This document shows positions 3,501-61,410 of a DNA stretch of 64,000 bases, piece after piece. The notes below the pieces were generated by a model. The model saw nothing but the letters and a program-made list of their open reading frames with translations. It searched no databases and was not told where the DNA came from. The first letter of the stretch is position 1; each line of letters opens with the position of its first letter. The translations under genes and the position numbers were made by a program. The stretch covers positions 124,001 to 188,000 of IMG/VR virus record IMGVR_UViG_3300031521_001337; one strand, written 5' to 3'.

Positions 3501-3506
3501 AATATT

Positions 3507-9400: not shown

Positions 9401-11128
9401 TACTGTCAAAGCTTTCATTATTTCAATATTAGCTGTACTTGCTGTAAGTATTCTACTATCATTAGCTAATGATTTATTAGGTTTAAATTTACCTAAAATA
9501 GTATTACCTCTAGTAAATTCATTAACTTGATCTAAAGCATTAATAGTAATTGCAATAGCTTCTACACTTCGAGTATTAATGTTTCTAAATAATAATACAC
9601 CAGCATGAGATAATTCAGGAATTGAATTTTCATCATTTACTATTTCCCATTCAGGTGTTAAATATTTATTAAGTACTCTTTGCATTTGAATTGGAGCTTC
9701 CTTACCATTAATAAGAATTCCATGTTCTTTATTTTTAGCAGCTTTAAATGACTTAACAAGGTCATTCATTTTACTATCTTTAGCATTAGTCCATTTTGTT
9801 ACATAATCTTCAACTTTAGCTTGAAATCTTTCTTCCCAACCTAGTTTAGTTTTATCTTCTTCAATCCTTTCAGTATTTAAATTATTTACAATATAAATCT
9901 TAGCTTGACCTTCTGAACGAGCAATAGCCTCTTTAACTAAATTTTCAACAGATTTACCTTTTGTTTTAGTTTTATAATCATAAGCAGGAAATGCAATCTT
10001 ACAAGTATCAACAATTTCAGAATCTAAATCAGTAGTAGATAAATGATCCCTTTTGATTTTAGAAGGAATAAGAGTTCTTAAATCATTACTCATATTACCT
10101 GAATTATATTCTAATCCTGATGATGAATTTGATCTGTCTGAAATTTCTTCTAATGTAATAGCGTTAGGATTTATTTCAATATTATTACCTTTTTTAGGAA
10201 CAATTAATTGTAGTATATTTAAAGAAGATTGAGCTGTATCAACATAACTATCTAACAACTGACGTTTTATTCCTAAAATATAATCAGTTTCTAATTTCTT
10301 AGATGAATCCCAATCAGAATATTTATTTCTTGAAACTTTAATTTCATATAAATTAGGAATTCCTTTATCATCAATTTCTAATACATGAATATTTCCATTC
10401 ATATGATTAGCAGTACTGTTTACAGATTGACCTATTTTAATAATACTATTAGACGATTGCATTTTTCTACCTCAAACAATTAAATCATTTTTAAGTGTAG
10501 CAATCGCTATTTTGTAATTGTCTAAATTAAATTCTTTTTTCTCAAAGTTAGACGTTCCATCTAATTTATCAAATTCTTTAGATGCAAATTGATTATAATT
10601 ATGAATCTCTTTCATAAGATTCTCTAAATACATATCAATATCTTTATCCTTATATAATTTACCAGCATCAGATAAAGCCAATCTTACAAGATTAGAACCA
10701 ATTTTACTCATTTCCATCATTCTATTATCAAGAGATAAATTTAAATTAACTCTTGCCATTAGAACAGCAGCAGATTCATTAGGATATTTAACTTTTAATA
10801 AAGCTAATTGATTCTTTTTAAAATTTGCTTCAATAAATTCGGGGGAGAGTAATTTCTCTTCCCCGTTTATATTATGTGTAAGTTTTATAAAACTATAAGG
10901 TGTTAATCCATCAGATACTTTAGGATCGATATTTGATTTTGCTGTATTATCTTCTAACACATTTAAAGTTAAGTCTTGTAAAGATTGGGTTAGTGTATCT
11001 TCAGATCTACTGTGTTTTACACCCACTTCTTTATCCAGATTGTTCTTAACAAAATCTGTTAGTTCTTTATCCGAATTAAAAGTTGCATTAAATCCGTCTA
11101 TATTTAAATAGTATTTACATTTATCCAT
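6458..11128 (-). CDS. Giant virion-associated protein D (1556 aa with TGA=Trp), possible degenerate PD-(D/E)xK domain near the N-terminus
   Basis: Track fragments 10472, 9338, 8867, 8528, 7994 and 7124 are in one frame, joined by TGA only. Starts MDKC, ends TAA at 6458. Confidence 0.85.
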
Positions 11129-11139
11129 TTTATTTTATT

Positions 11140-14100: not shown

Positions 14101-14208
14101 TCTACCTGATAATAATTTTTTAATTTCATTAATATCAGTAACAGGTTTTTCAACTGAACCTAAATTATATTTCTTACCTCCAACGTTAAGTATTATTTCA
14201 CAACTCAT
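11140..14208 (-). CDS. Virion-associated protein C with zincin-like metallopeptidase domain (1022 aa with TGA=Trp)
   Basis: Fragments 13219, 13000, 12412, 11881 and 11323 are in frame; PLHEILHLVL (HExxH) plus downstream EE. Starts MSC, ends IQDCSY-TAA. Confidence 0.85.
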
Positions 14209-23162: not shown

Positions 23163-23169
23163 TTTTTAT

Positions 23170-29100: not shown

Positions 29101-31617
29101 TAAAGAAATAAATGGTGCGTGTAAATTTTTATTTAATGTAAATAGTGATAACTTATGATAGTATTCAGCCTTTTCACCTTTTAATAATTCTTCAACTAAC
29201 TTTCTTTTTTCATTAAGTTTAGATTGAATATCACCTTTACCTACTTCATTTTTATTTACACTTTTATCATCTTTTTCAGTTTGTACATTTTCTAATTGAG
29301 TAGTAAGATCTACAATATCTCCAATTAATTGAGTAAAATCTGATTTTACAAAAGAATCAGTTCCGTTTTTCTTTAAATCAGCAATTCTAATATCATCAAC
29401 AATTGCTTTTCTAATAACAGATTCATCATCTTCTTTTATGTTTTCAAGATTTAAAATTCTATCAGCATTTTGAATATATGCTTTAGTAGCATTAGCAATA
29501 ACATCAGCTTGACTCATTCCACTATCACCATCTTTAGCTAGATAAATTTGTTTACCATCTACATTAGTTGTAACTGGAGATAAATCAGTACTTCCAAATC
29601 TACTTTTTTGTTTATCAATTTCTTTATATAAATCTTCTGCTTGACCATTAGCTACAAGTTGAAGTACATTATATTTTGTTTCTTGTTCAATACCGTGTCC
29701 AGATAAAATAGGTGATATAACTGAATGTTCTAATTCAAACATAGGTCCTCCAACCATACCTCCAACTAAGTTAGATACATAACGTTCAAATCCTGATTTA
29801 CTAAATACATTATCAAATCCTCCAAATGAACCTTGTTTCTTAGTAAATCCACAAGCACTCATAATATCAACAATACCTTTAGCTGCATCAGAAGCAAGTT
29901 CTTCTGAAACTTCTTCAATACCTTCAATCATTGATACTTTAAATAATTTTTCAGCTAATTGACTTTCTCCAATAGGTTGTGTAATTAAATTTTGAAATCC
30001 TTGTTTAGCTTTTGAAAATACATTCCCCAATGCTTTTTTACCAGCAATTTTATCTGTTGCAAGTAAATTAACAGCTTCTTGTGTTTCACCCATTAATTCA
30101 CGAGTAACACTTCTAATTCCAGCTTTATTAACTTCTTCAGTATAACCTGTAGATTTATCTAAAAACCAGTGACCTAAATTATTATTCTTCATTAAAGCAT
30201 ATTGACCTGATGCGGCTAATAATGCAGCAAAACCTGCTGTTCTATTATCATATCCTCCAGCTTTAGCATCACCATAAACATCAGCAGATTGCGTCATAGC
30301 CATGTAACCTAAGTTTAATGTTTCAGCTAATTGTGATCGTTTATGATTTATAGATTCAAGTGTTCCAATTTTATCGTAGGCAACTTGAGCAAGACGTTCG
30401 TAGTTTTCTTTACTTCTAGTTATACCTTTTACAGCATCACCAATAGCAACATCTTGAAGAATATCTTCAGTTTGATTAGCTAATTTTGCTAAATATTCAG
30501 TCTCATGTGACTTATAAAATAAATTAGACAAACTACCAGCAGCACGTTGTTCATAGATTTGTGAAAAAGTATCTGCAACCATACTTCCCATTTGTTCATA
30601 ATTCCACATAGATTGTGAACCCGCATCTGAAATACTTCTAACATCATATTTAGAAAGATATCCTTGTGCAGTATTCATTGCTTTCCATAGTGATGTTTCA
30701 TTACCTTTTTCAGTATCACCTGTAAATAATGCTTCTGCGGCTTTATAAAAAGTTGGAAGTACAGTAGCTAAACCTAATGCCATTTTCATTCCACCATAAT
30801 ATACATTAACTCCAGGAATTAAATAAGGTGCAACTTGTGTAGCAAGTTTCATAGTAGTCCCAAATACAGATTTATCTTTACCATCAGAATCAAAGAAATC
30901 TACTTTATTTAATTTAGAACCATCAACAGTAATTAAATCCATAGGATTTACTATTTGTTTACCATATACTTCACGTTTACCAAGTGTTTCAATATAAAGA
31001 TTTCCATCTTTATCATATTTCCAATCACCTTTTTTATGATTTACATGTCTTTTTGTCATAGGATCTATATCAGCACCATCTTCATCCCACTGAGCATAAA
31101 CCATTGTAGGTCCCACTAAAGAACCCATTAAACCCATGTCATTAGCTGATTTATCTAATCATTGTTTAGATTCAGAATCATATACTTTTGATTGTTGAGC
31201 TAATTCTCTTAAAGATAAATCAGATACATCAATACTATTTATTCCAGTTTTACTATATAATTGTTTAAACGGATTATAATCCTTAGTTATAACTGGAGCT
31301 ACATCTGCACGTAATGCTCCTTTTGGAGCAGTAAAATCTGTTGGATCATATTCTAACGCTTTAGCTAAAGCTTTATCATTTCCTAGGTCATTATACAACG
31401 ACGCAGCTTTTTGATAAGCTGCGTTGAAGGTTTTGTCATCGAATTTACCAGATGCATCTTTAAACATCGATTGAACTTTATCTAATTTTTTATAATCGTC
31501 CATAGGTAATAGTTGAGTATTACTTGGAACAACATTAGAACTAGCTAAATCGAATAAATTTAAATCTGGTTTCTGCACTAATGCAGAAAATATATCATTT
31601 GGTTTTGTAATTTCCAT
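23170..31617 (-). CDS. Giant virion-associated protein A with SF1 (RecD/Dda-like) helicase domain (2815 aa with TGA=Trp)
   Basis: Seven fragments in frame; GSAGTGKTT (26413-26439), MIDEMSQ, GDNLQ, QGEEFDQV, LYTLVTRSK. Ends QYNCKF-TAA. Confidence 0.85.
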
Positions 31618-31625
31618 ATTATTGT

Positions 31626-33479
31626 TTATTTACTATTGAAAAAACTGAAATCAGCTTTAACTTGTGGAGTTTCATATTTTTGCAGATCTACTCTAGCATC
31701 TGTTAAGTTTTGTTGTTTATTCTGCATATGACCTGCAATTGAAGCAGCATATATAGAAGCATCTCGTTTATATGGAACTGCAATCATTCCTTTATAATAA
31801 GTGGTTGTCATATCAGTTCAACCAGTAGGAGCCTTAACTTTATTATCTTTTCATACTGTTTTTAAAGCATCTGATACAGTATCTTGTTCTTTACTGTCCA
31901 AGGCTTTAACTTCAGAATTATTATCTGCTTCAGAAGCACCTTCAGCAGTATAACCATACATTATTAAGAATGGTTTTATATTATTGTTTTCTCGTACTAC
32001 AAAATCATTACCAACTTGAACATATCCAAATCCATGACGTTTGTAATAATCATTGATTATAGCAGGAGACCAATCATTTTTATGTTTTTCAATTTCTGAT
32101 TGAACTTCATTAAATTGTTTAAGTGCATTATAATTAACAGTACCATCATTATTAGACGGCATATATACTTTAGCAGCAGTTCCACCATCATAAATAATAT
32201 CATTAGCGCCTTTCATTCCAATAATTTTATCACCAAATGTAGCCTTACTCATATCAACAAGAGAACCATTTTTAGAATTCATTATATTTTTAAATGTAGT
32301 CATACCTAATGGAGTTCCATCTTCTGTAGCTAATCTTGCAGCACCTGTAACATGTAATATCATTTTCTTATTAGTTGTAATATCATTTCATTGCATTGGA
32401 GCTGAACCAGTTTTGCCATTATGTAATAATTCAAAAGGTGATACATTAGCTAATCCTTTTGCCGCGGCTGAAGCTTCTTCTGTAGCTCCTGGTAATTTCT
32501 CTGGAGAAATCGCAGAAGATGTTTTAGCAGTTGTATTAGTAATCAACATATCTAATATAAAATCTCTTGGATCTTTACCACCATTAACTATAGCAGTTGC
32601 TTTTAGTTTTTGTTGAGCATGAACATCCATTGTTTTTCATAAATAGTCTAAAGCTTTATCAATATGATTTCTTTCTGAACTATTTTCTGTAATAACTTTA
32701 TAATGATCTCCAGGAGTGTTAATTATTTGATTTAAACTTTCTAAAGCAGATTGTTGTTCTTTTGTTGGACCTTTTACTGATACTTGTGATTTTAAAATAT
32801 CATACTGTCCTTTAACTTGATCTTTAGAATAAAAATTTTCATTATGAGTATCTTCTGTTCCTAAAGAAGCAATTAAATCTTTAAGATTAGTTTTTATTTT
32901 ATCTAACCCAATAGCATTATTTGCAACATCAAATATTGAATTTTGTCCTGATAATTTAGGATTATATTGTCTTTCATTTAATAACTCTGCAACAGATAAT
33001 AGTTTATATTGATCTTTGTGTTTATCGTATTCGTTAACGTTAATTGCACTAACATTTCCTTTAGCATCTTTACCATAAACCATATCATTATTTACAGCAA
33101 CTTCACCATAACCTCCTGCAGCAGTAGCTGTTTTAGCAGCTTCATCTCAAGCAGATTTACTTTGTTTAAGTTCATTAATTTTACCAACTAATCTTAATGA
33201 CATTGCTCTATTATTACTTTGAGCATATGGATACATACTTCCCGAATTAGTTGATTCAATTTTAGCTAATTCAGAAACAAATCCGTTAACATCATTTACT
33301 AAACCTTTACCCATTAAATCTTTAAATACATCATCATCTAACATAGATGAAATAGTATGTTTACTTTCTTTAGATGAACTAGATGATGAAGAAGTTGCTT
33401 GTACAGGTTGTTGTTCAATGATGGGGGTGAATGTTGCAAACCCACCCCCTTGTTGAAATTTATTTATATTATATTTCAT
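31626..33479 (-). CDS. Putative virion cargo protein (617 aa with TGA=Trp)
   Basis: Fragments 33147, 32637, 32388, 31851 and 31626 are in frame; N-terminal KFQQGG motif. Confidence 0.8.
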
Positions 33480-39288: not shown

Positions 39289-40428
39289 TTAAGCTTCAAC
39301 AGTTTCTATAAGTCCTGTATTGTCTTGAGTATTTTCTAATATCTCATAAACTAACAACTTACCAGCTTTAAGTGCTATGTCTTCATCTCCATCTTTATAT
39401 TGTTTAAACATCTCTTCTAACTTGTCTGTAACATCTTTATTAAAAATGATTTCATTAAGTTCAATTTCTGCGTGTTGAGTTATAGCACCACCTTCATCCA
39501 TTGTTACAACCGGAATACCTTTATCAGTAACTTGTTCTGAAATTTCTTCTGGCAGATCGTGTTTTCTAGCATGTAATGCTCCATCAGGTATAACATTAAA
39601 TTTACCACCATCTTCAAATACATCTATTTCAGGAACTTCAATTACTTCTATGATCGGTTTAACTCTTAAAGAATAATTAACCCGATTTTTAATATTAGTC
39701 ATTTGTAGTTTACTTCCGCGTTTTGCAGCTAATATATTAGTTGTTATACCTCCAAACAATTTCTGTTGATTTTTGGTAGCGATGTCTCCAAATGAATTCG
39801 CAGAAGCTAACATATTCTGTTTACTTTGAAACATAGAATTACCCGCAAGTAAATTCTGTTTATCATCATATTTAGTCAAATTGTTAGCATTTCTAGTTTT
39901 ACCAGCTCAAGTACCTAATAAAGTCTGTTTCTTTCCAGCATTAGTATTCATATTAAATGAATATGCTCCAGTATCTAATCCAGTAGTACCTTGCTTTTTA
40001 GCTGTAGTTCCTGCAAATTTATTTAATGTTGTAAGAGCAGTAAGACCAGCTCCGATTCCCATTAATGCAGGATTACCAGATTTAAGCATCATACCAGCTC
40101 CTTTATCCATAAGTCCCATTGTACCCTCTTCTAAATCTGAGCCAGTTTCAGCACGTTTTAAACCTGCTGCTTGTAATCCAGTTTCTAATAGTTGTGGAGC
40201 TTCTCCAAGTATTTCAGATCCTACAGAAGCAGCGGGTGCTGCTCCTGGGATTTGTGTTGAACCTGATTTAATAGTAGATCCATTTGCATTCATACCTAAG
40301 TTTTTATTAAGTCCTTTTATAATTTTATTTATATCTAGACTATTTGTAGATAAATATGAATTCTTAGAACTTAATTGTTGTAAAGATCCAGATGGTGTTT
40401 GATATTTTTTAATTAATTCTTTAGGCAT
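39289..40428 (-). CDS. Putative virion cargo protein (379 aa with TGA=Trp)
   Basis: Fragments 39907 and 39289 are in frame; Gly/Ala hydrophobic segment, FEDGG and MDEGG motifs, GALH...EIELNEIIF domain. Confidence 0.8.
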
Positions 40429-43400
40429 AACTTATAGTGAATAATGTTCTTAGAGCATTAATGACTGCATATTGTGTACCATCATATTTTACTCGTATTT
40501 TAATATATTTATCTCTAATTTTCATTTCATTTGCTTTAGTAAATAATAATTCATTATTTTTAACATAAGCATAAGTAAAATTAATTGGTTGAATTTGAAT
40601 ATCTCAAGAATCTTCCATATATTGCATATTACCTTTTACTCTACCAAATTGTTTAAGGTTTAAACCTTGTTGATAACTGTTAACTAATTTTTCTTTAGTT
40701 TTATTATGTTCTTTAATACTTATATCTTTAGTACGTATTAAATTTCCATAAAATGAATTTGGTAAATTAATATCAAAATATTCACTATTAGAATTACTAT
40801 CTTTTTGTGTAATAATATAAGGAAGTTTTGGTGTTAAAGGTTTTGCAATTAAATAAAGTCTATAGCGTTCATCTAAATCTGTGATTCCAGTTAAATTAAC
40901 TCCATTAACATTATTTATTGTGATGTTATTTAATTTTAATATTAAATCTTTATCTTTATTCCAATCAAATCCTTCGCCAACAACTTCATAATAAAATGAG
41001 TTGGGTTCTGCTAAATTAGATATAATTTTTAAGTTATTAAATATTTTCTGAACTCCAGGAATTCCATTAGCAACAAATTCAAATTCGAATGGATATTGGG
41101 CATCATACCAATAAGTTGGAAGAATTGTTCCTTGCTCTTCTTCGAATCCCGCAAATCCGTGTTTATACAAGTAATTAGATGCATTTTCATGCTTCTCTGT
41201 ATTTGCAAAGGTATAAAAAATATTATTTATATTTTCTGAAAATTCTGGAAACCATGTATATTGAGTAACCCATTTGTTTGTAAGTTCACTATGACATAAA
41301 TGTCAAGATACATTATTATATTTAAACACAAACATAACATCTTGTTTAAATGCGTTATAATGTGATTTTACAAAATTTACATTTATACTATTATCATAAT
41401 CAGATTCTTTTAAATTAATATGATCATTTAAGAATTTTTGAATTTTCAAATCAGATATAACTTCAAATTGTTGTCCATTAGTTCTCCAAATCTTTTTAGC
41501 AACAGTATCAATACCGTAAATAAACTTAGATGTTTTAATTATAGAATCTGCTCACATAGATCCAAATGTATTTGATAATACTTTAGGATTTTTAGGAAGT
41601 ACTGTATCAGTATTAATGTATACATTATCTCCTTGTGCATTTGTCATCATTGCTCTTTCGTTTACAGGAATCATTAATACTCCATGTTCCATAACAGCAA
41701 TAAGTGTTCCATATCATTCCTCTAATTTTACAAGTTCACCATGTTCAAGAGTATAATCTTGATAATTTGGAGATTCGAATATACGAGTTCCATTTACAAA
41801 TGATGATTGTTGTAATTTATTTGAATAATTGATTCTATTTGTAAATGAAGTTTTGATAAAAGGAACATCAGGGATTTCAAAATAATTTTTATCTCCTAAT
41901 GATTTACTAATACCTCCATTAATTATATGAGATTCAGGTAAACTATCTTGCATATCAATTGAATGATAAGGATAGAATCCTCTTTTCTTTTTATGAACAG
42001 CTTCTTCCATTGGATTTGAAAAATCTACATCTCTCATTGCTAAATTAGTATTACTGCAAACTTTAATTGTAACTCAATAACCTAAAGGAACTGCATTAAC
42101 ATCAGGTTTATTAATCTTCTGTGATCCAAATAATCCATTAATTTCAGAATACTTTTTGAACTTCTTACCATCAGCTTCAATTATTGAATTATTTCCAGGT
42201 TCTCCATCACTAGTTTCTCCTGAGAATGATGCAACAAAGTTTCCTCTATAAGTAAAAACGGGTAAAAGTTTTCTATACGATAATGATTCAGTTGTAAGTG
42301 TTCCATCTGTTCCACCTGACTTAACAATTGTAGAAGCTTTATTAATAACTCTAAAATTTTTATATCAAGTTCAAGGATCTATAATTTTTTTATTAGTTGG
42401 AACTTCACCATCAGTAAAATTTCAAGTCATTCTTTGAGTTACTGTATTTATATAACAATCACCTCTAAAAATATTATTAATATATTTTGAGTCAGTTCCA
42501 GATAATTTACTTCATTCAATTCTATCAGTAATAGGAAAAAATGGAGAAGAATTATTATATCTTATTTTAAAGTAATCTTTTCAACTTACATTAAAATTAT
42601 AATCTTTTTGAAAAATATTATAGTATTCACCATCAACAATAGCATCTGATTCAGTTGCTAAATAAGTATTAAATATACCTCTAACTTTAGTAGATGTATA
42701 ATTTACATTATCATCAGTAACTGTATTTTCTAAATCTTCATATGCTCCATATTTAGGATCTGCATATTTAGAAACATCAATATCATTACCTGCTTGTGAA
42801 CTAAATGAGAATTTACTATTTTTAATTAATTCAATACCTGGTTCAATTAAAGTAATTGGGGTATTAATTTCTGTAACATCTGATACTTTTGGAATAGTAT
42901 TTTCTAATATTAAATTTAAATAATCTTTGGAATTATTTATAAATGATTTATTAGAACGAGTATACTTAGTAGTTCTTAATAAGAATTCAGATGAATTAAA
43001 AAATGAATTAAATGTATTTACTTTTAAAGTAGCTTCTGGACAAAGTAATGCATTATGATTAATATCATCTACTTTAAATAAACTTGTTCCTAATTTAGGT
43101 TTACCTGAATTATTTGTAGGACTATTAGTTGTAGTTAAGAAAGATTGTCCAAAATGAGCATCATTAATATCTTCTTTATAATTGTTATTTACAATTTTTA
43201 AAGTTGGAGTGTATGCTTTTGTTGATGTAGATATACCTACAGCCTGAGCTAATATAGTAGGAATTCTTTTTTGTCTAACAATAAAAAATCCTTTAGTTAT
43301 GTCTTTTAAACCATCAATTATATCAGATCCTTCTAATACACTATTTCCAAGTTCATCATTTTGAAATGATACTTTTAAACCAATTGGTTTAATTGATAAA

Positions 43401-44680
43401 GTTCCATTCATCATTGACTTTTCAGTCATATCTATTTTGAATACACCTTTTACATTTTCATCAGTACCTTCGATTAAATAATCATCTCCATAATTAATAT
43501 CATCTCCAATTTTAGGAAGATATGAATATATTGTATTTTCATTAATAACTTTTTTACCTCTAATATTAAATACTGGAGATAATGTATAATCATTCATAAT
43601 ATAAACTATTCCTAATCGATAAACTTCTTCATCTCAATATCCTAATTTATAATATATATTATTTGCATTAAAATATTCATTTCCTATAAATGGATATCTT
43701 TCATTATAATTTTCATCTAAATATCCAATGCCATTAGTATCATACATAGGAGTAGGTATAGCATATAAACTATACTTTTCTAATGTTTTAAATACTTCAT
43801 AATTATTTGTAATATTTCCAGCAAAACAAATATTTTGACAAGTTGCCAATGTTTTTACTGAATCAAAATTTGCATATTTAATATTAATACTATCTGTTGT
43901 AATTTCAGTATGATTTTCATAACCTGTAATAGAAATTTCAGTATTATTGTTTACAATTTTAAATTTGTCTTCAATAAAATATGTTTTAACTATTTCAGAA
44001 TCTCCATCACCTGTAGATCTTGTATAATATATATTAATGTAATCATAAGCTAAATCTAAATTGTTTAATCTAAATTTAATAACTTTATTACTATTCTCAT
44101 CTAATTGACCTCCTCTTATTGATTTAGGTGAATTTACTGTTCCTATGTGACATATTACTTTTCCTGATTCAGCAATAAAATCTGATTCATTTCCATCATA
44201 ATCTGCTAATTTAAAATAAAAAGTATAATTTCCAACTTTCATATTACCACCATCTTTAATTCCTAAAAAATCAATAGTAGTAATTTTATTAGTATTCTTT
44301 ATTAAACTTGCTTCAATTTTAAAATTGTCAGCTGAATAAATATTTGTGTCTAAGTTACCATGTCTATCTGCAATTTTATATTCAGTTGAACTTGTCAAAT
44401 AGAATCTAGAATTTATGATTTTAGGAGGATTAACATCATCCGTAACTATTATATTTACTGAATCATCATAAGATACTTCAGTAGTAATCGCTATAGGATG
44501 ATCAATATTTACTTTTGCTACATCAGCATCTAATCTTAACGGTAAAAGAGATTTTTCAGGTACAGTTGCACTAGGATTCAATAAATTATAAAAAGGAGCA
44601 TATTCATATAACAGGGTTCCTGATTCAGGAATCCCGTATATAGAATTAGTTATTGATAAATTTATTATTGGTAATGCCAT
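40421..44680 (-). CDS. Tail stabilization/muzzle-type structural protein (1419 aa with TGA=Trp)
   Basis: Fragments 43634, 42581, 41714 and 40604 are in frame; FRGDCYI and the C-terminal KIRDKYIKIRVKY resemble crAss tail stabilization proteins. Confidence 0.7.
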
Positions 44681-44681
44681 T

Positions 44682-45329
44682 TTATTTTATTCTTAGTATA
44701 TAATTAACTACAAAGTAAGGAGGCATATTATTATGAGGCATTGTTACTCCACTATCTCCACCAGCGTTACCTGTAAGACCTTGATAAGTACGTGCATTAT
44801 TTTCACCAACTATTGTATTTGTAGCATTACCAGGCATTCCTGTAGTTACTTTATTATATACAAAGAAAGAACCATTATCATCCGCAATACCATTTGGATG
44901 ATTATGTACTGGTGATTCAGTAAGATCTAATTGATGTGAAAATTCACCTGCTGAAGCACCTAATTCAAGAGTTGCATATGCATATAATGGAGGAATTCCT
45001 GCTTGAATTAATGATGATCCAGGTTTAATATAAGGAATACCTATAGTTGTAACTCCATCTCCTCCATAAACTAGAAACATAGGTCCCATTGTAGAAACAA
45101 ATGAAGGATGACAATCTGCTACATTAACTGTTTGACCTGGAACATTACATCACACATATCCCTCTGGTGGTAACGTACTTGAGAAAAAAGGTTTAGGTAT
45201 TCCTCAATCTGAATAATATAATGCTGAAATCATTTCATCATTTGCATTCACATGATCACCTCTCTTTATTTTATTCCCAGCTACTGGAATATAATTTTTT
45301 ACAGCTGTTTTTATTGCTTCTAGTAACAT
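44682..45329 (-). CDS. Tail-collar-domain protein (215 aa with TGA=Trp)
   Basis: Start extends to ATG 45329 through two TGA; PPEGYV[W]CN...GEFSHQL...HNH...PHNNMPPYFVVNYILRIK. Confidence 0.75.
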
Positions 45330-46460: not shown

Positions 46461-47404
46461 TAATTAAAAATTTTATATTTAATTATTATTTTCTGTCCAT
46501 CTTTAGTTTTACAATATTTAGTTTTTCCAGATAATACATTAGATGTAGATGAACTTGTTATATTATAATAATCACAAACATCTTTAGCACAATTAAAAGT
46601 TTTAATAAAATTATTTTCAAAATCAAAAATATCAACAATTATTGGTTTTAAAATTTTTTTATCTTCTAAATTAAAATTATCATCTTTATATCTTCAAATT
46701 AATCTTAAATTTTCTAATTTACCACATGTTTGTACTATTCGTTTACAATTTTTTGTCACAGAACTAGGGTCAACATTATAAAATTTTGCTCCATCTTTAA
46801 TACATTGAAATGTATTTATTAATGCTCCATCTTCTGTAAAAATATTAACCCCAAGTTGTAATCCTTCTTTTATTTTTTTAGATCTTTCAGGATTATTTTC
46901 ACAAGCTATTTTAGTATTAATTTTTATTTTTTCTTTATGTCCTTCAGAAAGTGAAATATTTAATTTAGCTTGTCTAATTCTTTCTTTAGATTCATCTGAT
47001 CTTTTTGTTCCTAATTGTAAATCTCTTAATTTTTTTCTAGTTTCTGCAGATACAATTCTTCCTTTACTCCCTATACCACCTAAATTAGAATTATATCCAT
47101 TTTCAAAAGAATCAAACTCTTTAATGTAACTAATTTCTAATTCAAATAATTCGTTATATAAAGAATCTTTATCTATATTCCTACAAATTTTAATAATTTC
47201 TCAATTAAAATTTTCTTCTCCATATTTACGGATTGCATTATAAAAATATGAATTTCGATCTTTATGCTTTTTATTTCTTGCAGCACTTAGATGTTCGGTT
47301 TTTCTTCTTTTTAAAGATCTAATTGTTTCACCAATATAACATTTATTGTTTAATTTACAAGTTGCTTTGTAAATATATCCTTCATATTCATTATCTTTCT
47401 TCAT
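46460..47404 (-). CDS. Free-standing GIY-YIG homing endonuclease with NUMOD3/NUMOD1-like repeats (314 aa with TGA=Trp)
   Basis: GYIY...YIGET...R..EH...FN[TGA]EII...ELEISYI...NGYN..LGG, then SAETRKK and SDESKERI repeats. Confidence 0.85.
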
Positions 47405-48410
47405 TTCTTAATTCTTGTCATGTTTTGTTAGATGGTGTGAACTTGTGTTCATAAGCTTCACCCATATATTCTAAATCTCTAACTTTTAAACTATCTGCTC
47501 AATAACTCCATCCTTTAAAAGTTTTACTTTTAAATCTAAATACATAAATATGTTTTGCTTTATAATAAAGTTCTTCCTTAATTTTACGAGGAATAATATT
47601 ATTAAATTTGACAATTGATTTGCTAGTTTTATTATCTTCTAATCATTTGTTAAATCCGGTTGGATTTAATCCTATATAGTAATATCCATCGAATGGAGTT
47701 TTCTTTCATCCTTCGATCTTTCTTAATTTTCTATCTCTACGAATACTGTATTCTTTAATCTGTATATCAGGAGTTAGTGTTAAATGTCCGATATAAGCTA
47801 AACAATTAATATGTCTTTTTGATATTATAGATATGGCACATCCATACTTTATAGCGGAATGCATACGTCTGAATCCATGTGTCAATAATCTTTTTATTTC
47901 AGGTTTTGTAAAAGTATTGAATTCCATTTGAACTTCATCTATAAAGTCATCTAAGAATACATCTTTTGTTGTGTAAAATTTAACTCCAGAGTTAACTCCT
48001 TCCATAAATTTTCTCTTTAATTCACTCCCAATATATATGGGAATCATTTTAGGATATGCTCTAGTTTTAAAATAATAATTCATAAAATATCCTGTAAAAT
48101 CAGATTCTACAAAATCAACTTCTTGAAATCGTCCATTCTGACGTTGTGTTATAAATTTATCACCCGTTACAATTTCGAAGTCTATATAAGACTCCGCAAC
48201 TGTAGGGATTACAAATCTAACTCTATCATCAATAACTCTATGTAATATTAAACCAAGACAATATCTAAAAGGACCAGCTATAGCATCTTCATATGTTGCA
48301 TTTCATCCATAAGTATCATTAAGATTCCTTCATTTTTTATCAGTAACCTTTGTAGGAGTATTTGAATAAATCTCCCCAGGTGTTAGTCCATGATTAAATA
48401 ATATACGCAT
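47391..48410 (-). CDS. Conserved late-region protein, possibly HU/IHF-like (339 aa with TGA=Trp)
   Basis: Open from ATG 48410 to TAA 47391 with six TGA; the HU/IHF resemblance is weak and partly positional. Confidence 0.55.
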
Positions 48411-52168: not shown

Positions 52169-53062
52169 TTATATTATCTTATTTGGAGGATTATCTGATC
52201 TGGTTCATAAAAATCCATTACACGATCTTTTTAATTTTATAGCAGAACTAATACTAGCTAATTTTAAATCTAGTTTATTTTTAGCTTGAATAATAGTATC
52301 AAAACTATCAATATATATTCCATCTAAAGAATATCTATTTAATTTTTCTGATTTTTTATTAACTATTATTTGTAATTTATCATATTTTTCAGTACTTATA
52401 AAGTATCCTGAAATTTTATAATTTGCTCTAATAGCTCTATTAAGATTTCCAGAATTTGTATCTAAAAATAATATAGCATCTGACATTTTTTCAAATTCTT
52501 CTACTAAAAATCCATCAACATCATAAATATAATATTTATTAGGATTATGTAGATTATATTCTGAAATATTTATTAGATTATTATAACTCCATAAAAACCC
52601 ATTACAAGTTCTTTTTTCATTAATTGCTCCATATATATTAGATATATCTCTTTCTATAATTTTACTAGCTTCTATAGCAGATTCATATGATTTTAATAAA
52701 TTTCCGTTAAAATCAAATTGATAAACAAAATTATATGGTCTAGGTCTTCCTTTTCCACCTAATGATGTATTGTATGTTTTATCACTATTTATAAATTCTT
52801 CAGTAACTAATTCTGATTCTTTTATATACGCATCTTCTTCTTTTTCAAATACATATAAAATATCTCTTTTAAAATTTGATATTCCATGTTTTATTATTGC
52901 AAAATGAAAAGGACGAATAGGATAATTCAAATAATGTGTATTGTTTAAATTAAATCCATTTCCTAAATATCCATCAAAAATATCAGGATTTTCAGTTTTA
53001 TGTACTCCAATATAAATTTTATTGTTAATTAAACAAGTAGTTTTGTAAACAATGTATTTCAT
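52169..53062 (-). CDS. Free-standing GIY-YIG homing endonuclease with NUMOD1-like repeats (297 aa with TGA=Trp)
   Basis: YIVYKTT...KIYIGVHKT...DGYLGNG...AYIKESEL...TYN..LGG; three VYQF/YSLDG-type repeats; one TGA near the C-terminus. Confidence 0.85.
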
Positions 53063-54082: not shown

Positions 54083-55513
54083 CTAAACTTCTTCAATAAT
54101 GAATGATTTATAAGGAGCGAATGCTGCAATACCAGAGTATCCTGCAACGATCAATTTAGATCCTGCGATTGGAGAACTAACGATACCACTAGTGATACCA
54201 TCTACACCACCAACACCTGGATATTTAGATGTTACAAATTCTGCACCTTCTAATGTAAATGCTGCGATAGCTGGTTGATTTGTTGAAACGTCAGGTGACA
54301 TATCAAGACAAATACCGTATCCTTTTCTATCATATTCTTTAGTAAGAGCACGATCAACCATGAATGTTACCATATTACCGGCAATTTCATAAGAAGTGAA
54401 AGTTCCACCAACTTTGATAGGATTATCAGCTTTAACCATTGATTGAGCTGCTTTAGAATACATCATTGTTGGAGTTGATCCCCACAATTTCAACCAGTCT
54501 CCTAAAGTAGAGTTAATTTGACCCCAAAGTCTATCATTAACAATAAATGTGTAACTGTTACCAATTGCATTTGCTGCTTTTTGATTCATTTGATCAATTA
54601 CTGTATTGATGATGTTTACATTCAATTTAGCATATTTATACTTAGATGCAAATCTTTCGATTTGAGGAATAAGACCATCACCCGCGATAAGTGGACGACC
54701 ATCTTCTGTAAGTACAGTAGATTTACCATTAACATCCATAGTTGTTTTTCCCCATAGTAAGTGGTTATTTTTAACTGTTTGGAAGTTTTCAAACAAATCT
54801 TTTTCCATTTTGTTTAACTTAAAGATCTTTTCTTTCAAGTCTCCAGCTCCATCTCCTGATGCAATTTTGATAAATTGATCTTCCATTTGAGCATAACGAG
54901 AAGAGTAAGAAATGTCATTTCTATGTTCTGTGATCCATTGACGATGTTTTTCAATGTTTGATTGATACTTAGTATAACCTTCTTCATGGTACTCAGGCAT
55001 AATATTAGATAAGAAACGAGTTGTTCCACCTACTTGACATGCTGAAGCATCAAGAATTGAAGAGAAATCTGCATCAATTAATTGAACCGTATATTCCCAG
55101 AATACATCTGCTTTTCTTTGTGGGGTTGCTTTAACAATACATTGCTGACGCGATCCGTCAATTTTGAATGTATCATATTTTTCATAATATCTTTCTTTGA
55201 AATACATTATGATATCTGCACCACCTGCACCAGTACCCGTTGGTGCTGCTGCGAATTCAACTCTTTTTACGAATTCTACATCAATTTCCCATTCTACCAT
55301 TAAGGTATTAAGTGGTTGAAATTTATTAGCTGTTTTAGAGTTGTAATAAATGTTCATTAAGGCTTCTGTTAAGAAAGTCGCTGTATTATGTGTATACATG
55401 CGAGCCATAACTCCCATCATTTTAGGACGAGTTCCTAAAAGTTTGTAGAAATCCTCATAGGTTCTACTGTGTGCCAATTCTGGCTTTACGTTAACGTAAC
55501 TTGCTACTACCAT
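54083..55513 (-). CDS. Major capsid protein, crAss-like
   Basis: 476 aa with crAss MCP-like blocks (VEWEID, PEYHEEGYTKYQSNIEKHR, LLWGK, GDGLIPQI); preceded by an acidic scaffold-like gene and followed by a hairpin; all 7 Trp are TGG. Confidence 0.85.
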   Translation of the reverse strand: MVVASYVNVKPELAHSRTYEDFYKLLGTRPKMMGVMARMYTHNTATFLTEALMNIYYNSKTANKFQPLNTLMVEWEIDVEFVKRVEFAAAPTGTGAGGADIIMYFKERYYEKYDTFKIDGSRQQCIVKATPQRKADVFWEYTVQLIDADFSSILDASACQVGGTTRFLSNIMPEYHEEGYTKYQSNIEKHRQWITEHRNDISYSSRYAQMEDQFIKIASGDGAGDLKEKIFKLNKMEKDLFENFQTVKNNHLLWGKTTMDVNGKSTVLTEDGRPLIAGDGLIPQIERFASKYKYAKLNVNIINTVIDQMNQKAANAIGNSYTFIVNDRLWGQINSTLGDWLKLWGSTPTMMYSKAAQSMVKADNPIKVGGTFTSYEIAGNMVTFMVDRALTKEYDRKGYGICLDMSPDVSTNQPAIAAFTLEGAEFVTSKYPGVGGVDGITSGIVSSPIAGSKLIVAGYSGIAAFAPYKSFIIEEV

Positions 55514-57208: not shown

Positions 57209-57493
57209 TTATTTATTTAATTCAGAGAATATTGTATCAACATCTATTACAATTGTACTTCTAATTAATACTTCTGTATTTGAAGTAAAATTAAAATTAA
57301 AATTTATATTATTTTCAATTCCAGGATTATTCGATACATTAAAATTTCCTTTATTAACACCTTCTATATTAGCAGAGCCATTAAAAGATATTATTTTACT
57401 TTCTTTAATTGAATAATTGAAAGTATAATCTACATTTCCAATTGTTACTTTAGCTTCAACACTAGTTGATTCATTTGTTTTTGTAATTTCCAT
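57209..57493 (-). CDS. Hypothetical protein
   Basis: 94-aa ORF between the FISUMP gene and the endolysin; not hydrophobic enough for a holin. Confidence 0.7.
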   Translation of the reverse strand: MEITKTNESTSVEAKVTIGNVDYTFNYSIKESKIISFNGSANIEGVNKGNFNVSNNPGIENNINFNFNFTSNTEVLIRSTIVIDVDTIFSELNK

Positions 57494-57518: not shown

Positions 57519-58622
57519 TTATAATCCACCTTTAGCATAATGATATGTTCCACTATTTGTAGGAGATACTGAAAGTAATGTTAATCCAGTAAAATAACCT
57601 CCGATTATAGTACTAGTTGATTGAGATTGTCCTGATGATATTGTTAAATTAGCTCCTGATACATTAAATGATCTTCCTGCAGCAGCATCATAATAACTAT
57701 AATTAAATGTTATAGTAACATTTGTATTTACAACAACTGCACTCGGTGATCCTGCATATACTGAATACGCATACATTTTTCAATTTGTACCATCATATAA
57801 ATAATCTACATATATTTCAACATATGTATCATTAATTACATAATTATCTGCATAAGCTCAAGCATCATTATTATTGTAACTACAACAAGCTCCACTAGTT
57901 AAAGTAGATCATGTAGTATTATCAGTTACTATTGAAATATCATTTCCATTTCTATATTTAGTACCTCTTAAATTTGATGCCATTCATACTTGATTACCAA
58001 TTTTTACTGTCTTATAAGTATAACCACTATTATCAGTCATTATACCTGAATTAGTAGAATCATCTTTGATTAATCTAACTGAAGCACCTGTTGCAGATCC
58101 ACCACCTTCTAAACTAACTCATTCAGAATCATAATGCATATCCATCATAGTTGAAGTAGATAAATATAATCCAGTCTGTTTTATATATGCAAAATTTCCA
58201 GTATTATATCTAAATCCTCCGCCGACAGCAGCAAATTGATATATATCTGTAGCATTAGTATTTGGAGTTAACCAATGAGTTGTATTTGCTTCTTTCAATT
58301 TTCCACCACCTGTAGTTGTTCCTCCAATAGTTGAAACTAAAGTTTCTAATTCTGTTAAAGTTGGAACATGTCATCCACTTGGAGATATATTTCTAGAATC
58401 TAATACAGCATATGAATTATATAATCTACCATAACCACCATTAGGTAGTATGTGTTGATAGTTTCTAAAATTATATAAACTGTTTTTACTACCTACGTAG
58501 TTACTATCAAATGCACCAATAGCAGCGGAGAATAACTCAGTTAAACTCCTATTACTACTATCAGCATATATTTCAGTAACTACATCTCTTTGATTAAAAT
58601 GATCATTATCTGGAACTGACAT
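57519..58622 (-). CDS. FISUMP (Fibrobacter succinogenes major paralogous) domain protein, circularly permuted (367 aa with TGA=Trp)
   Basis: YGRLYN...PSG[W]HVPT...GKLKE...SVRLIKD comes before YKTVKIGNQV[W]MASNL...YRNG; six TGA. Confidence 0.8.
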
Positions 58623-61410
58623 ACTTTTCCTCCAATTGTTTTATTCTTGATTCAGCACTAGCAAGTTTTGCTATTATCAAGTCAATGTATTTTACTTTAT
58701 ATTCACCCTCTCTATTTCCAACTACAAATTCACTAAATCCATTAGATAATAAATCTTGAGCAATAGTACCAAATCTTAATTCTTCTAAGTTATTTTTAAA
58801 ATTAAATGAAACTAAATTGAGCCTACTATAGTCTTTAATGATTGGTTGAATATTAGTCTTTAAAGTTCTATCTGACGATAAAATAAAATTACTAGCAGTA
58901 ACATTACCATTGAAATGAGAATTATCACTTCCATCAATATAAAATGGAGTTGTACCATCGGAAGCATTTCTAATTGAAAATCCAGTGTTTGAAATTCCTT
59001 GTATTGAATTTTTAATATAGTATTGCTTAACTCCTGCTTGTGAACCTTGTAATTGTATTCTTGCCTCACCTCCAACATCATTTCTAATTAGCACAGCACT
59101 TTTGTTAATTAGAGCAATATCACCTGTTCCACTTTCAGCACTAATATATACTGCATTGCCAGTAAACTGTAAGTAACCTTGTCTAACTGTATTTGCTGAA
59201 TTATAACCACTCAAATAAGCGGCATCAGCAATCATTTTTATTCCCTCACCTGCATAAGTATTAACAGTTCCAGTTGCCATTAAAGTACCATTCACTGCCA
59301 ACTTATACCCTTGGTCAGAAATATATCCAATCCCAGTATTACCATTAGGGCTAATATAAAACCTCCCAATATCGGGTACTGTATTAGCACTTTGGGTTGA
59401 TTGAGTAGTAATTGCAAAATCTCCATAAGACTGATAATCTGTATGTATGAACCATTTCCTAGAACTACCATTAGATACATTATGGTCAAATGATAACATT
59501 CCTACCCAACCTGAACCGCTAGGCAATGATAATCTTCCGTTAATTCCCATCCCACCATTAAGAACTAATGCTCCTGTTGATGGTGATAGTGATTGAGTTG
59601 TGTTTGGTATACTTACTACTCCATTACTTTCAATAGTCAATAAGGGAGTAGTTGCATAATTAAAAGTAAAGGCTTTGTTTCCCCACTGTCCAACAGAATT
59701 AAAAATCATTGACCCATAATTATCTCCACTACTAATAAAATAGTCAAAAGAAGAACCTGAACCAAATTTTAATTTACCTGAATAATTATTAGATGGTATA
59801 TTAATAGCAAAATAATCACCTCTAGCTGATGCATTTGTCCCATCATCACTTATCAAACTATTTACAAAATTACTCCCATTCCATTTAGGAATGTAGTTTG
59901 TTGATAAACTTGATAAATCTTGTGTAGCAATATTATTTACGCCAATAAAATTTCTAATTTGAGTACTAGTAGCAGGACTCATTCTAGCATTAGGGGCATC
60001 GTATACCATTACATAACTTACCGTAGACGCAAAATCAGCGCCATAGTATTTTAAACCATTTACCATTTCAGCATTCAAATTCCCCACCATAGTAGTAGAA
60101 TTTACAGTTAATGGTGCTGTTCCAGTTGCTACTGTTGATTGTAGTTGAGTTGCATTTACTGTAGAAGTAAAAGTTACTGCTCCTGTTTTACTTAACCTAA
60201 ATCTTTCTGTATAAGTATGTGCAATAGCTTCTGTATTGTATGCTCTAGCATCAGAATAATCAATTACTAAATCAGTACCACTTCCACTGTATTTGTTGGC
60301 AATTCTATAAACTCTTTGGTCAGTTCCACCATCGGCATATAAGTACATAGCACTACCATAATCAGAATCCAATGCTCTTAATTCAACACTATGATATGTT
60401 ACACCAAATTTGCCTTTTCCATACGCTGTAACATCCCCACTAATCCACATATTTGCAGATTGTGCAGAGCTATTTTGGTTTAATATGTGGTCGTTATTGT
60501 TGGTATAAGCCGATGAACCTAGACCTAACCAAGATTGTATTTGATTTTGTGTAAAATTATAAACATATCCGTTAGAGTAACCTCCTAGTAAATTAGTAGG
60601 TACGGATTGATTAGCAGTTCCATTATATACTGTTCCTAGTGTTATACTAGAGCCTAAAGTCCCACTAGAAGATACAAAGTCTCCAGTGTTACTACTGGCT
60701 GCTGAACCGAATGTTCTAGTAGGTAGTGGAGTATAACCTAAAGCAGTAGTAACCATTCCTGAGTTGATACCAGTTATCCATCCACCGTAGTTACCAAGAT
60801 TATTATTAAATTGACTGAGATTAGTAGGTCTTGCTGCTGTCAATGCATAAGGTGCTAAACTACTTGCAGTTATAAAACCATTTGGATTAGTTGAATTATA
60901 AGGTACATATCCCAAAGCATTAGTAACAAGTGTTGAACTAATTTGTGTTAATGCTCCATTCTCAACACCAATCAATCTATTATTCATTTGATTGATTGTG
61001 TAGGCATTGAATGTATCAGTTAATGTTGCATTACTGAAAGAACCACCTAAATTAGCATAACCGAATACTGTTTGTATTAGTCCACCAGATCCAGAACCAC
61101 CAGAAGTAACACCAAATGCACAAACTTCACCTTTAACAGATAAATTACCATTACTATCTAAAGTCATTAAATCAGTGAATGTTCCATCTGTATTAACAGT
61201 TGAAAAATTTCAACCATTATCGGTTAACAAATAATTAGAAAGTGGTAATTTTATCACACCATTAGCACCAGCCAAATTAGTTGACTGTGCTACTAATGAT
61301 AAATAATTAAGTGGTACATAAGCACTACCAGAACCACCAGAACTATAATTATTAATAGCAGTAGTTGTTGAACCTCTTTGTAAGGCTATATTTTTACTTT
61401 GAAATTCCAT
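58606..61410 (-). CDS. Tail fibre/spike with C-terminal peptidase S74 intramolecular chaperone (934 aa with TGA=Trp)
   Basis: 61210 fragment joins in frame through one TGA; VT.ALGY.P repeats, GTAPLTVNST, SSDRTLKTNI...GTIAQD...VKY and a terminal coiled coil. Confidence 0.85.

What the first reader, a model, noticed from the sequence alone, without database searches (positions are those of the whole stretch)
57519..58622. Circularly permuted FISUMP domain in a tail-associated gene
Seen: the usual C-terminal half (YGRLYN..AV...PSGWHVPT...GKLKE...W..PNTNAT...GGFR...SVRLIKD) comes first, followed by the usual N-terminal half (D.SGYTYKTVKIGNQVWMASNL..TKYRNG...W......ACCSYNN). Established: canonical Fib_succ_major domains run D-GN-Y-TVKIG-Q-WMAENL to SVRC-KD and can be DGR targets diversified at the C-terminus. 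Inference: the permutation arose by tandem duplication and trimming, moving the variable end inside and allowing an extra C-terminal beta-rich domain. It is invisible in standard-code annotation.
Basis: partly seen in the sequence, partly recalled or inferred. Interest (0 to 1): 0.6.

Follow-up and report, generated by a model that had tools for sequence, protein, structure and literature searches.

The report
Circularly permuted lectin domain, phage tail
A tail-module gene of a large crAss-like phage that reads TGA as tryptophan encodes a sugar-binding-type (FISUMP, C-type-lectin-like) domain whose two halves are in swapped order; the swap is real, but it defines a large, apparently undescribed family of phage proteins and is not peculiar to this gene.

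Summary
Window 57519-58622 (minus strand) is one 367-aa gene once TGA is read as Trp. The genome supports that code: it has a tRNA with anticodon UCA and 233 in-frame TGAs, and a standard-code homologue has TGG at 5 of this gene's 6 TGA sites.

Pfam PF09603 matches in two pieces in swapped order: profile 49-187 at residues 63-186, then profile 1-45 at residues 206-254. A re-ordered copy made in a script gives one colinear full-length match. AlphaFold2 predicts residues 58-262 as one compact domain (pLDDT 93.6, pTM 0.90).

The gene follows a tail-fibre gene with a Peptidase_S74 chaperone domain, in a crAss-like tail module. It has three parts: a 58-aa N-terminal module, the permuted lectin-like domain, and a C-terminal beta-sandwich.

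The permutation is not unique to this gene. 88 of 122 related proteins and 74 of 78 related viral loci start with the C-half and end with the N-half, and most are in standard-code phages. I found no reverse transcriptase and no template repeat, so there is no DGR. A hypervariable stretch (residues 141-180, dN/dS about 0.9) lies inside the domain.

Most likely function: a tail-fibre-associated glycan-binding adhesin. This is a new variant of a known domain, of moderate interest.

The parts
57519..58622 (-). Whole gene, 367 aa plus TAA stop, read with TGA=W. The ATG at 58620-58622 follows a GGAGG Shine-Dalgarno sequence.
   Evidence: Full-length homologues P0002-P0018 (50-76% identity) start at the same Met.
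58449..58622 (-). N-terminal module, residues 1-58, three short helices ending in the motif FRNY. Probable docking module.
   Evidence: phrog_21885 E 2.5e-12. 53% identical to the N-terminus of Cellulophaga phage phi40:1 gp086, which also follows an S74 fibre gene. pLDDT 72-85.
58062..58436 (-). First part of the permuted domain, residues 63-187. It corresponds to the C-terminal two thirds of canonical FISUMP (YGRLYN ... SVRLIKD), which is the C-type-lectin-like core.
   Evidence: PF09603 profile 49-187. Own canonical HMM 67-198. VIA-align matches to C-type-lectin-like folds cover only this part.
58083..58202 (-). Hypervariable stretch, residues 141-180, just before the conserved SVRLIKD strand. 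Putative ligand-binding loops.
   Evidence: Column entropy about 3 bits against 1-2 elsewhere. Pairwise dN/dS 0.89 against 0.03-0.07 in the flanks.
57855..58049 (-). Second part of the permuted domain, residues 192-256. It corresponds to the N-terminal third of canonical FISUMP (TDxxGxxYxTVKIGNQVWMxxNL ... CxYNNN).
   Evidence: PF09603 profile 1-45 at residues 206-254. Own HMM 2-64. dN/dS 0.034.
57831..57848 (-). Low-confidence linker, residues 259-264, between the permuted domain and the C-terminal domain.
   Evidence: pLDDT below 50.
57531..57827 (-). C-terminal beta-sandwich, residues 266-364, Ig / Calx-beta / macroglobulin-like.
   Evidence: pLDDT above 90 with seven strands. VIA-align Z 4-6.5 to beta-sandwich domains. 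Present in about 20 close relatives.
58371..58373 (-). In-frame TGA read as W84 (GWHVP motif).
58119..58121 (-). In-frame TGA read as W168, in the variable stretch. The homologue has Ser here.
57984..57986 (-). In-frame TGA read as W213 (QVWM motif). Trp is invariant in 53/53 homologues.
57909..57911 (-). In-frame TGA read as W238. Trp in 51/51 homologues.
57858..57860 (-). In-frame TGA read as W255.
57780..57782 (-). In-frame TGA read as W281.
58606..61410 (-). Upstream gene, 934 aa: tail fibre with a C-terminal Peptidase_S74 intramolecular chaperone domain. Its stop overlaps the start of the target gene.
   Evidence: PF13884 at residues 846-888. Residues 837-929 are 83% identical to the fibre upstream of P0002 and 42% identical to phi40:1 gp085.

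Best explanation
The gene encodes a three-module accessory tail protein of a 213-kb crAss-like phage that reads TGA as Trp.

Module 1 (residues 1-58) is a small helical module. In this phage, in a standard-code crAss-like phage (L009) and in Cellulophaga phage phi40:1, it is encoded immediately after a tail-fibre gene that ends in an S74 chaperone domain. I infer that it docks the protein to the fibre or tail.

Module 2 (residues 63-256) is a circularly permuted FISUMP domain. The C-type-lectin-like core comes first. The 50-60-residue hairpin-containing sub-domain, which is N-terminal in canonical FISUMP, follows it through a short conserved linker (KDDSTN.G). The new chain ends lie in the loop that joins YNND to YGRLYN in the canonical domain. 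The two parts are predicted to pack into one compact domain. A hypervariable loop stretch (residues 141-180) sits where C-type-lectin-fold receptor-binding proteins carry their variable ligand-binding surface. I infer that this is the glycan- or receptor-binding site, and that it diversifies by ordinary mutation and recombination rather than by a DGR.

Module 3 (residues 266-364) is an Ig-like beta-sandwich of unknown role.

What is shown: the permutation at sequence level, the TGA=W code, purifying selection, the synteny, and how widespread the family is. What is predicted: a single compact fold. What is inferred: presence in the virion, docking, and glycan or receptor binding.
For: - Swapped, tiling profile matches. 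One colinear match after re-ordering in a script.
- AlphaFold2 on residues 58-262: pLDDT 93.6, pTM 0.90. Two BFVD models of viral FISUMP proteins superpose over 213-237 columns at TMq 0.88-0.89.
- The VIA-align hit list consists almost wholly of C-type-lectin-like folds on the first part of the domain, though with weak Z.
- Whole-gene dN/dS against P0002 is 0.155, with 0.034 for the junction plus N-half, 0.07 for the C-terminal domain and 0.89 for residues 141-180. Entropy profile.
- Context: the S74 fibre gene directly upstream, lysozyme downstream, and crAss capsid and muzzle genes nearby. The same fibre-then-FISUMP pair sits in a crAss-like tail module around P0002; P0088 likewise follows a long (789-aa, unannotated) gene in a crAss tail module, and a CN protein follows a virion structural protein gene in Rhodobacteraceae phage LS06-2018-MD05.
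- The N-terminal module is shared with phi40:1 gp086, which follows gp085, an S74 protein found in virions by mass spectrometry according to the record.
- A second gene in the same genome (10654-12132, 492 aa) has the same permuted order with different flanking parts.
- Family breadth.
Against: - No experimental structure of any FISUMP domain was found. The claim of the same fold with different connectivity therefore rests on predictions, and I could not superpose coordinates.
- Matches to solved C-type-lectin-like folds are weak (Z at most 4.2), and Foldseek found nothing in the PDB.
- Presence in the virion, docking to the fibre and carbohydrate binding are untested inferences.
- Architectures such as C-C-N exist. 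This suggests the core can stand without its own hairpin sub-domain, so 'relocated accessory sub-domain' may describe the change as well as 'permuted domain' does.
Confidence: 0.65

Rival explanations
1. Domain-swapped oligomer. The hairpin sub-domain (residues 192-256) of one chain completes the lectin-like core of a neighbouring chain in a dimer or trimer, so the permuted order serves assembly and not an intrachain fold.
For: Tail-fibre-associated proteins are usually trimers (general knowledge). In C-N-C-N proteins the N-to-C junction is as short as in canonical domains, so a given half could pair with either neighbour. C-C-N and C-C-N-N architectures exist.
Against: The monomer model packs both parts with pTM 0.90 and high pLDDT through the linker. 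The 10-residue linker is strongly conserved. No oligomer model was tested.
Confidence: 0.12
2. The fold is as described, but the role is different. The protein may be a tail-fibre assembly factor that is not kept in the virion. Or it may be a decoration that sticks virions to environmental glycans (mucus, polysaccharide) and is not a host-receptor adhesin.
For: Genes directly after fibre genes often encode assembly chaperones (general knowledge). Only the S74 chaperone region of the upstream fibre and the N-terminal module of this gene are conserved together across distant phages. Lectin-like and Ig-like domains on phages have been proposed to bind mucin glycans (PMC9853417, title and abstract only).
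Against: A hypervariable surface with dN/dS near 0.9 inside an otherwise constrained protein is what is expected of a part that tracks variable host surfaces. A lectin-like domain plus an Ig-like domain is unusual for a pure chaperone.
Confidence: 0.18
3. Decayed remnant of a tandem FISUMP array. The two partial domains do not form a functional unit, or they are really separate short genes under the standard code.
For: Table 11 gives only fragments. The protein database itself holds a 259-aa fragment of this gene (P0004).
Against: - TGA=W is shown by the genome and by homologues.
- dN/dS is 0.155 overall and 0.034 across the junction.
- There are dozens of full-length relatives, including 210-220-aa proteins that consist of the permuted unit alone.
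- The fold prediction is confident.
Confidence: 0.03
4. The gene is a DGR target whose variable repeat has been moved inside the protein by the permutation.
For: FISUMP and other C-type-lectin folds are known DGR targets (PMC5758913, PMC4159848). Zeta crAss-like phages often carry DGRs that act on tail fibre proteins (PMC12386605). One permuted relative, P0079, lies next to a real DGR.
Against: - There is no RVT_1 match in the genome, which CheckV rates 100% complete.
- No template-like repeat of the gene exists anywhere in the genome. The only match is the paralogue's conserved motifs.
- In L014 the variable repeat lies in the neighbouring gene, not in the permuted FISUMP gene.
Confidence: 0.02

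Closest known systems
Canonical Fib_succ_major / FISUMP domain (Pfam PF09603, NCBIfam TIGR02145)
   Same: It has all the conserved motifs and scores well above both curated cut-offs. The closest canonical relatives share 34-48% identity over the halves.
   Different: The order of the two segments is swapped. The chain ends lie in the YNND-to-YGRLYN loop, and the old ends are joined by a short conserved linker. There is no signal peptide: signal-like N-termini occur in 13 of 29 canonical relatives against 6 of 88 permuted ones by a crude test. Leu replaces Cys in the SVRC.KD strand. Neither Pfam nor NCBIfam has a separate model for this order.
C-type-lectin-fold variable proteins of DGRs (Mtd 1yu0, TvpA 2y3c, TaqVP 5vf4) and crAss-like tail fibre proteins with C-terminal lectin-like domains
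   Same: The predicted core belongs to the same fold class (weak Z). It is a phage tail protein with a hypervariable stretch just before the last conserved strand of the core. The use of such domains in crAss-like tails is described in PMC12386605 and PMC7290462.
   Different: There is no reverse transcriptase and no template repeat. The variable stretch is internal and is followed by about 75 further residues of the same domain plus another domain.
Compact C-type-lectin-like adhesin domains: invasin D5 (1cwv), intimin (1f02), Legionella Lcl C-terminal domain (8q4e, Pfam Lcl_C), Bdellovibrio Bd2740 tip domain (8oks)
   Same: These are the best structural matches to residues 59-190 (Z 3.5-4.2, 72-80 aligned residues). 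There is also a weak Lcl_C sequence hit.
   Different: They lack the extra hairpin sub-domain altogether. The similarity is at fold level only and is weak.
T2/T6-type gp38 adhesins, encoded downstream of the long-tail-fibre gene (comparison from my own knowledge, not tested here)
   Same: Gene order (fibre gene, then a small adhesin gene), an N-terminal attachment module, and a variable receptor-binding part.
   Different: No sequence or fold relation was tested. This is a functional analogy only.

Membership tests
Fib_succ_major / FISUMP (PF09603, TIGR02145) | Score above the curated whole-protein cut-off | tested here: met
   92.2 bits against 33.9, and 78.1 against 41.65
Fib_succ_major / FISUMP (PF09603, TIGR02145) | One colinear match across the model from the TVKIG.Q.WM start to the SVRC.KD end | tested here: not met
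   Two pieces in swapped order: profile 49-187, then profile 1-45. Same result with my own canonical HMM.
Fib_succ_major / FISUMP (PF09603, TIGR02145) | Signature motifs present (TVKIGNQ.WM..NL, YG.LYN, GWH.P, GGKLKE, SVR..KD) | tested here: met
   Read directly from the translation and the alignment consensus
Circular permutation of a domain | The two segments tile the parent model without overlap in swapped order, and re-ordering restores one colinear match | tested here: met
   HMM 67-198 plus 2-64 in the native order; HMM 2-198 at 213 bits after re-ordering in a script. Same result for the paralogue and for P0088.
Circular permutation of a domain | The permuted chain folds as one domain | tested here: met
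   Prediction only: pLDDT 93.6 and pTM 0.90 for residues 58-262. Stand-alone proteins of 208-220 aa consist of this unit alone.
Circular permutation of a domain | Same three-dimensional arrangement as the parent domain, differing only in connectivity | not testable with these tools
   No solved FISUMP structure was found.
DGR target gene | Reverse transcriptase in the same genome | tested here: not met
   No RVT_1 candidate in six frames of the 213,486-bp record
DGR target gene | Template repeat matching the variable region with mismatches at adenines | tested here: not met
   blastn of the gene against the genome finds only the paralogue's conserved motifs
C-type-lectin-like fold | Significant structural match to solved members | tested here: inconclusive
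   The hit list is thematically consistent, but Z is at most 4.2 and only the first part of the domain is covered. Foldseek found nothing.
Crassvirales tail/structural module | crAss-type capsid and muzzle genes nearby, and conserved gene order with crAss-like relatives | tested here: met
   Crass_capsid at 54083-55513. crAss_MUZ at 40424-44686. P0002 and P0088 lie between a long gene (the Collagen+S74 fibre for P0002; a 789-aa gene without a Pfam hit for P0088) and the Ring/MUZ genes.

The most novel reading that the evidence does not exclude
The permuted FISUMP unit is a distinct, largely phage-borne receptor-binding cassette that arose once from the bacterial canonical domain. A single split between permuted and canonical units is not rejected. 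By burying the hypervariable binding loops in mid-chain, the permutation freed both chain ends. The unit can then be strung in tandem, nested, or fused to docking and Ig-like modules, and may complete itself across subunits. It would thus be a DGR-independent route to host-range diversification in crAss-like and other Bacteroidota phages.
Probability: 0.25. Interest if true: 0.55.

Novelty: new variant of a known kind. Interest (0 to 1): 0.42.

Why it matters
FISUMP domains are very common in Bacteroidota, in Fibrobacter and in their phages, but their structure and ligands are uncharacterised, and I found no solved structure.

Recognising a large permuted sub-family has four consequences:
- It explains why domain scans report two partial hits in these proteins.
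- It gives annotators a defined unit for a dedicated model.
- It marks a probable receptor-binding protein, and its variable surface, in crAss-like phages, whose receptors are mostly unknown.
- It offers a natural test case for how circular permutation changes the way a binding domain can be combined with others.

For this genome it also shows that annotating with table 11 destroys the gene.

Tried and rejected
- Complex prediction of the N-terminal module (residues 1-62, three copies) with residues 800-934 of the upstream fibre (three copies): no verdict (score 0.00). This counts neither for nor against binding.
- Foldseek against the PDB found nothing significant with the whole model or with the domain model.
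- VIA-align on the whole model was filled by the C-terminal beta-sandwich, so the domain was folded alone.
I did not resend it elsewhere.
- Search for a solved FISUMP structure by sequence and by a canonical profile: none found.
- DGR search: no RT and no template repeat.
- A FastTree of 183 core units was poorly resolved, with 9 changes between permuted and canonical labels. I replaced it with a constrained-tree AU test.
- Literature: 11 papers mention the family names, and none mentions a permutation. One paper holds both 'circular permutation' and 'C-type lectin fold', but I did not open it, so I cannot say whether it links the two.
- I considered and rejected the idea that the permutation is needed to carry a C-terminal domain: most permuted relatives have none.

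Full report
**Where the window lies and which code applies.**
The window is bases 124001-188000 of a single 213,486-bp IMG/VR virus record. The record is linear, CheckV rates it 100% complete, and its G+C is 0.30.

Read with table 11, the minus-strand genes are chopped. With TGA read as a sense codon, ORFs of 1,000 to 2,985 aa appear, and total long-ORF length rises from 15,535 to 22,991 aa in the window.

Four results show that the genome uses this code:
- ARAGORN finds 24 tRNAs and a tmRNA, and also a 74-nt tRNA with anticodon TCA.
- 109 ORFs of at least 200 aa hold 233 in-frame TGAs, and all end in TAA or TAG.
- In the target gene, TGA falls on alignment columns that are Trp in 52/53, 53/53 and 51/51 homologues.
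- The 76%-identical homologue P0002 lies in a standard-code phage and has TGG at five of the six sites.

TGA=Trp is therefore shown by the genome itself, not assumed. The pattern matches what has been published for Zeta crAss-like phages (opal suppression of structural genes, a tRNA-Sup-TCA, about 26 tRNAs; PMC12386605).

**The observation.**
Window 57519-58622 (minus strand) is a 367-aa frame, P0001, with six TGAs. Its ATG follows a GGAGG Shine-Dalgarno sequence. Full-length homologues share the start.

Pfam PF09603 and TIGR02145 both match well above their cut-offs, each in two stretches. Scanning the pieces apart gives residues 63-186 = profile 49-187 and residues 206-254 = profile 1-45.

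I also built a canonical-order HMM from 56 canonical units found in the homology search. The native protein hits it as HMM 67-198 followed by HMM 2-64. A copy re-ordered inside the script hits it once, colinearly, over HMM 2-198 at 213 bits. The same holds for a paralogue and for a 217-aa relative.

**Fold.**
AlphaFold2 with 53 aligned relatives gives the whole protein pLDDT 89.6. Only residues 259-264 fall below 50.

Residues 58-262 folded alone give pLDDT 93.6 and pTM 0.90.

Two BFVD models of viral FISUMP proteins superpose on it over 213-237 columns at TMq 0.88-0.89. A third aligns over only 128 columns at 0.9 Å, which fits a target in canonical order, though I could not read that sequence.

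Against solved structures Foldseek finds nothing. VIA-align gives weak scores (Z at most 4.2), but the list consists almost wholly of C-type-lectin-like folds: invasin, intimin, Lcl C-terminal domain, Link modules, Mtd, TvpA, TaqVP, FGE. Nearly all of them fall on model residues 2-135, which is the first part of the domain.

My reading is that the first part is a complete compact lectin-like core. The canonical 'N-terminal half' is a hairpin-bearing accessory sub-domain that can sit on either end of the chain, because the two ends of this fold lie side by side. This reading rests on general knowledge of the fold.

No experimentally solved FISUMP domain was found by sequence or by profile.

The C-terminal 100 residues form a confident beta-sandwich similar to Calx-beta, macroglobulin and Ig-like domains (Z 4-6.5).

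**Context.**
The gene's start overlaps the stop of a 934-aa gene with a Peptidase_S74 intramolecular-chaperone domain, which marks tail fibres and spikes. Downstream lie a 94-aa ORF, a phage lysozyme, a 332-aa ORF and a crAss-type major capsid protein. A crAss muzzle protein lies at 40424-44686.

The closest homologue, P0002, sits in a 93-kb standard-code crAss-like contig. There it directly follows a 931-aa Collagen+S74 fibre gene and precedes DUF5675, Ring-2, Ring-1 and muzzle genes. The 217-aa relative P0088 sits in the same kind of module, after a 789-aa gene that has no Pfam hit on record.

The first 58 residues (phrog_21885) are 53% identical to the start of Cellulophaga phage phi40:1 gp086. 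That protein also follows an S74-bearing protein, gp085, which the record lists as a virion component found by MS/MS.

Across these three phages the fibres share little beyond the S74 region (83% and 42% identity; a short shaft stretch is also 42% identical to the L009 fibre), and the downstream proteins share the 58-aa module.

A Rhodobacteraceae phage has a 209-aa protein matching the permuted unit (P0001 residues 65-244, colinear) directly after a virion structural protein gene. Tail association is thus well supported by synteny, but it is not shown physically.

**The permutation is a family trait.**
The word-based protein search returned 2,063 hits. I classified the best 120, plus the query and the paralogue, with half-domain HMMs:
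- 88 begin with the core and end with the hairpin sub-domain. Of these, 54 are C-N, 25 are C-N-C-N, and the rest are variants such as C-C-N.
- 29 are in canonical order.
- 61 of the 88 end within six residues of the cut, typically at ...AYNND..NV.
- 26 of the 29 canonical ones end at SVRC.KD.
- By a crude test, signal-like N-termini occur in 13 of 29 canonical proteins and 6 of 88 permuted ones.

In IMG/VR, 318 stretches encode relatives. Of the 78 best loci, 74 have the permuted order, and 71 of the 78 read in the standard code.

The same genome holds a second permuted gene at bases 10654-12132 (492 aa) with different flanking parts.

So the gene is invisible to standard-code annotation only in this recoded genome. 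Its relatives are visible and are labelled simply as PF09603/TIGR02145.

**Origin.**
The junction in permuted proteins is the canonical C-terminal strand, six or so linker residues (DDSTN.G), and then the canonical domain's own start (.TD.DG..Y.TVKIG). A signal-less tandem protein, P0069, has almost the same junction between its two canonical units. This is what duplication followed by trimming would leave. It is not proof, and the direction (which order came first) is not resolved.

A quick maximum-likelihood tree of 137 core units needed 5 changes of arrangement. A tree constrained to one split between obligately permuted and obligately canonical units had a higher likelihood (p-AU 0.99). 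A single origin is therefore not rejected. An earlier FastTree was too poorly resolved to use.

**Selection and the variable stretch.**
Against the P0002 gene, Nei-Gojobori dN/dS is as follows:
- whole gene: 0.155
- junction plus hairpin sub-domain: 0.034
- C-terminal domain: 0.07
- residues 63-140: 0.37
- residues 141-180: 0.89

Column entropy over 53 relatives tells the same story: about 3 bits for residues 141-180 and 1-2 bits elsewhere.

The estimate is pairwise, and dS is near saturation, so it is indicative only. Still, the gene is clearly functional. Its variable stretch lies just before the last conserved core strand, where lectin-fold receptor-binding proteins carry their variable surface.

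**No DGR.**
There is no RVT_1 candidate in the genome and no template-like repeat of the gene.

One permuted relative, P0079, lies next to a genuine DGR in a bacterial prophage region. The template repeat is at L014 2971-3087, the variable repeat is at 2791-2907, all mismatches fall at template adenines, and the RT is at 3200-4276. However, the variable repeat belongs to the neighbouring 411-aa gene, not to the FISUMP gene.

**Conclusion.**

It is best described as a member of a large and apparently unnamed permuted branch of the FISUMP family, typical of phages. I found no dedicated Pfam or NCBIfam model. Of the papers I could search, the 11 that name the family do not mention a permutation; the one paper that holds both 'circular permutation' and 'C-type lectin fold' was not opened.

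The most likely role is a fibre-associated glycan-binding adhesin whose internal variable loops diversify without a DGR. That role is inferred, not shown.

The complex-prediction job on the docking idea gave no verdict and is listed only among the things tried.

Noticed in passing
G000:C1 whole genome; window 1-64000: In-frame TGA density is uneven. It is 5-8 per 1,000 codons at genome 0-20 kb and 120-200 kb (structural and lysis genes), but 0.5-3 per 1,000 at 20-80 kb and 100-120 kb. This fits published ideas that recoding marks late genes.
   Followed up: partly
G000:C1:30014-30087 (minus strand), outside the window: A 74-nt tRNA with anticodon TCA, which ARAGORN calls SeC. It is the likely opal suppressor. 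It is not visibly similar to the genome's own tRNA-Trp(CCA) at 83042-83123. Its amino-acid identity was inferred only from Trp columns in homologues.
   Followed up: partly
G000:C1:68160-68566, outside the window: ARAGORN calls a tmRNA gene in the phage genome, with tag peptide GNKTISFARTAFMAAA.
   Followed up: no
G000:C1:10654-12132 (minus strand) = L001:700-2178: Second permuted FISUMP gene (492 aa, 9 TGAs), with a different N-terminal part and a 205-aa C-terminal extension. It lies next to an ORF with a GKGLSTNDLT fibre-like motif.
   Followed up: partly
window 14208-23165 and 23170-31629 (minus strand): Two adjacent giant frames of 2,985 and 2,819 aa that are open only with TGA=W. They were not scanned against any family library.
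   Followed up: no
window 46463-47407 and 52169-53062 (minus strand): GIY-YIG and NUMOD1-type homing-endonuclease genes are inserted in the structural gene block.
   Followed up: no
G000:C1:1-1000: The first kilobase of the record has G+C 0.45-0.46, against about 0.29 for the rest. It could be a chimeric end, a host flank or an acquired piece.
   Followed up: no
L014:1686-4276: A complete DGR cassette in a bacterial prophage region: target gene of 411 aa with no Pfam hit, variable repeat at 2791-2907, template repeat at 2971-3087 with all mismatches at template adenines, and RT at 3200-4276. It lies directly downstream of the permuted FISUMP gene P0079.
   Followed up: yes
proteins P0025, P0027, P0030, P0033, P0034, P0039, P0040, P0072, P0076, P0086: Many C-N-C-N proteins begin with a short extra copy of the first core strand (GYGRLYNW), followed some 10 residues later by the full core. 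This is a local duplication at the permutation boundary.
   Followed up: no
proteins P0054, P0056, P0067, P0073, P0087, P0116: C-C-N and C-C-N-N architectures exist. Either the core can do without its own hairpin sub-domain, or the units are nested.
   Followed up: no
window 57209-57493 (minus strand): A 94-aa ORF between the target gene and the lysozyme gene, with no family match. By position it could be a holin or spanin, but this was not tested.
   Followed up: no
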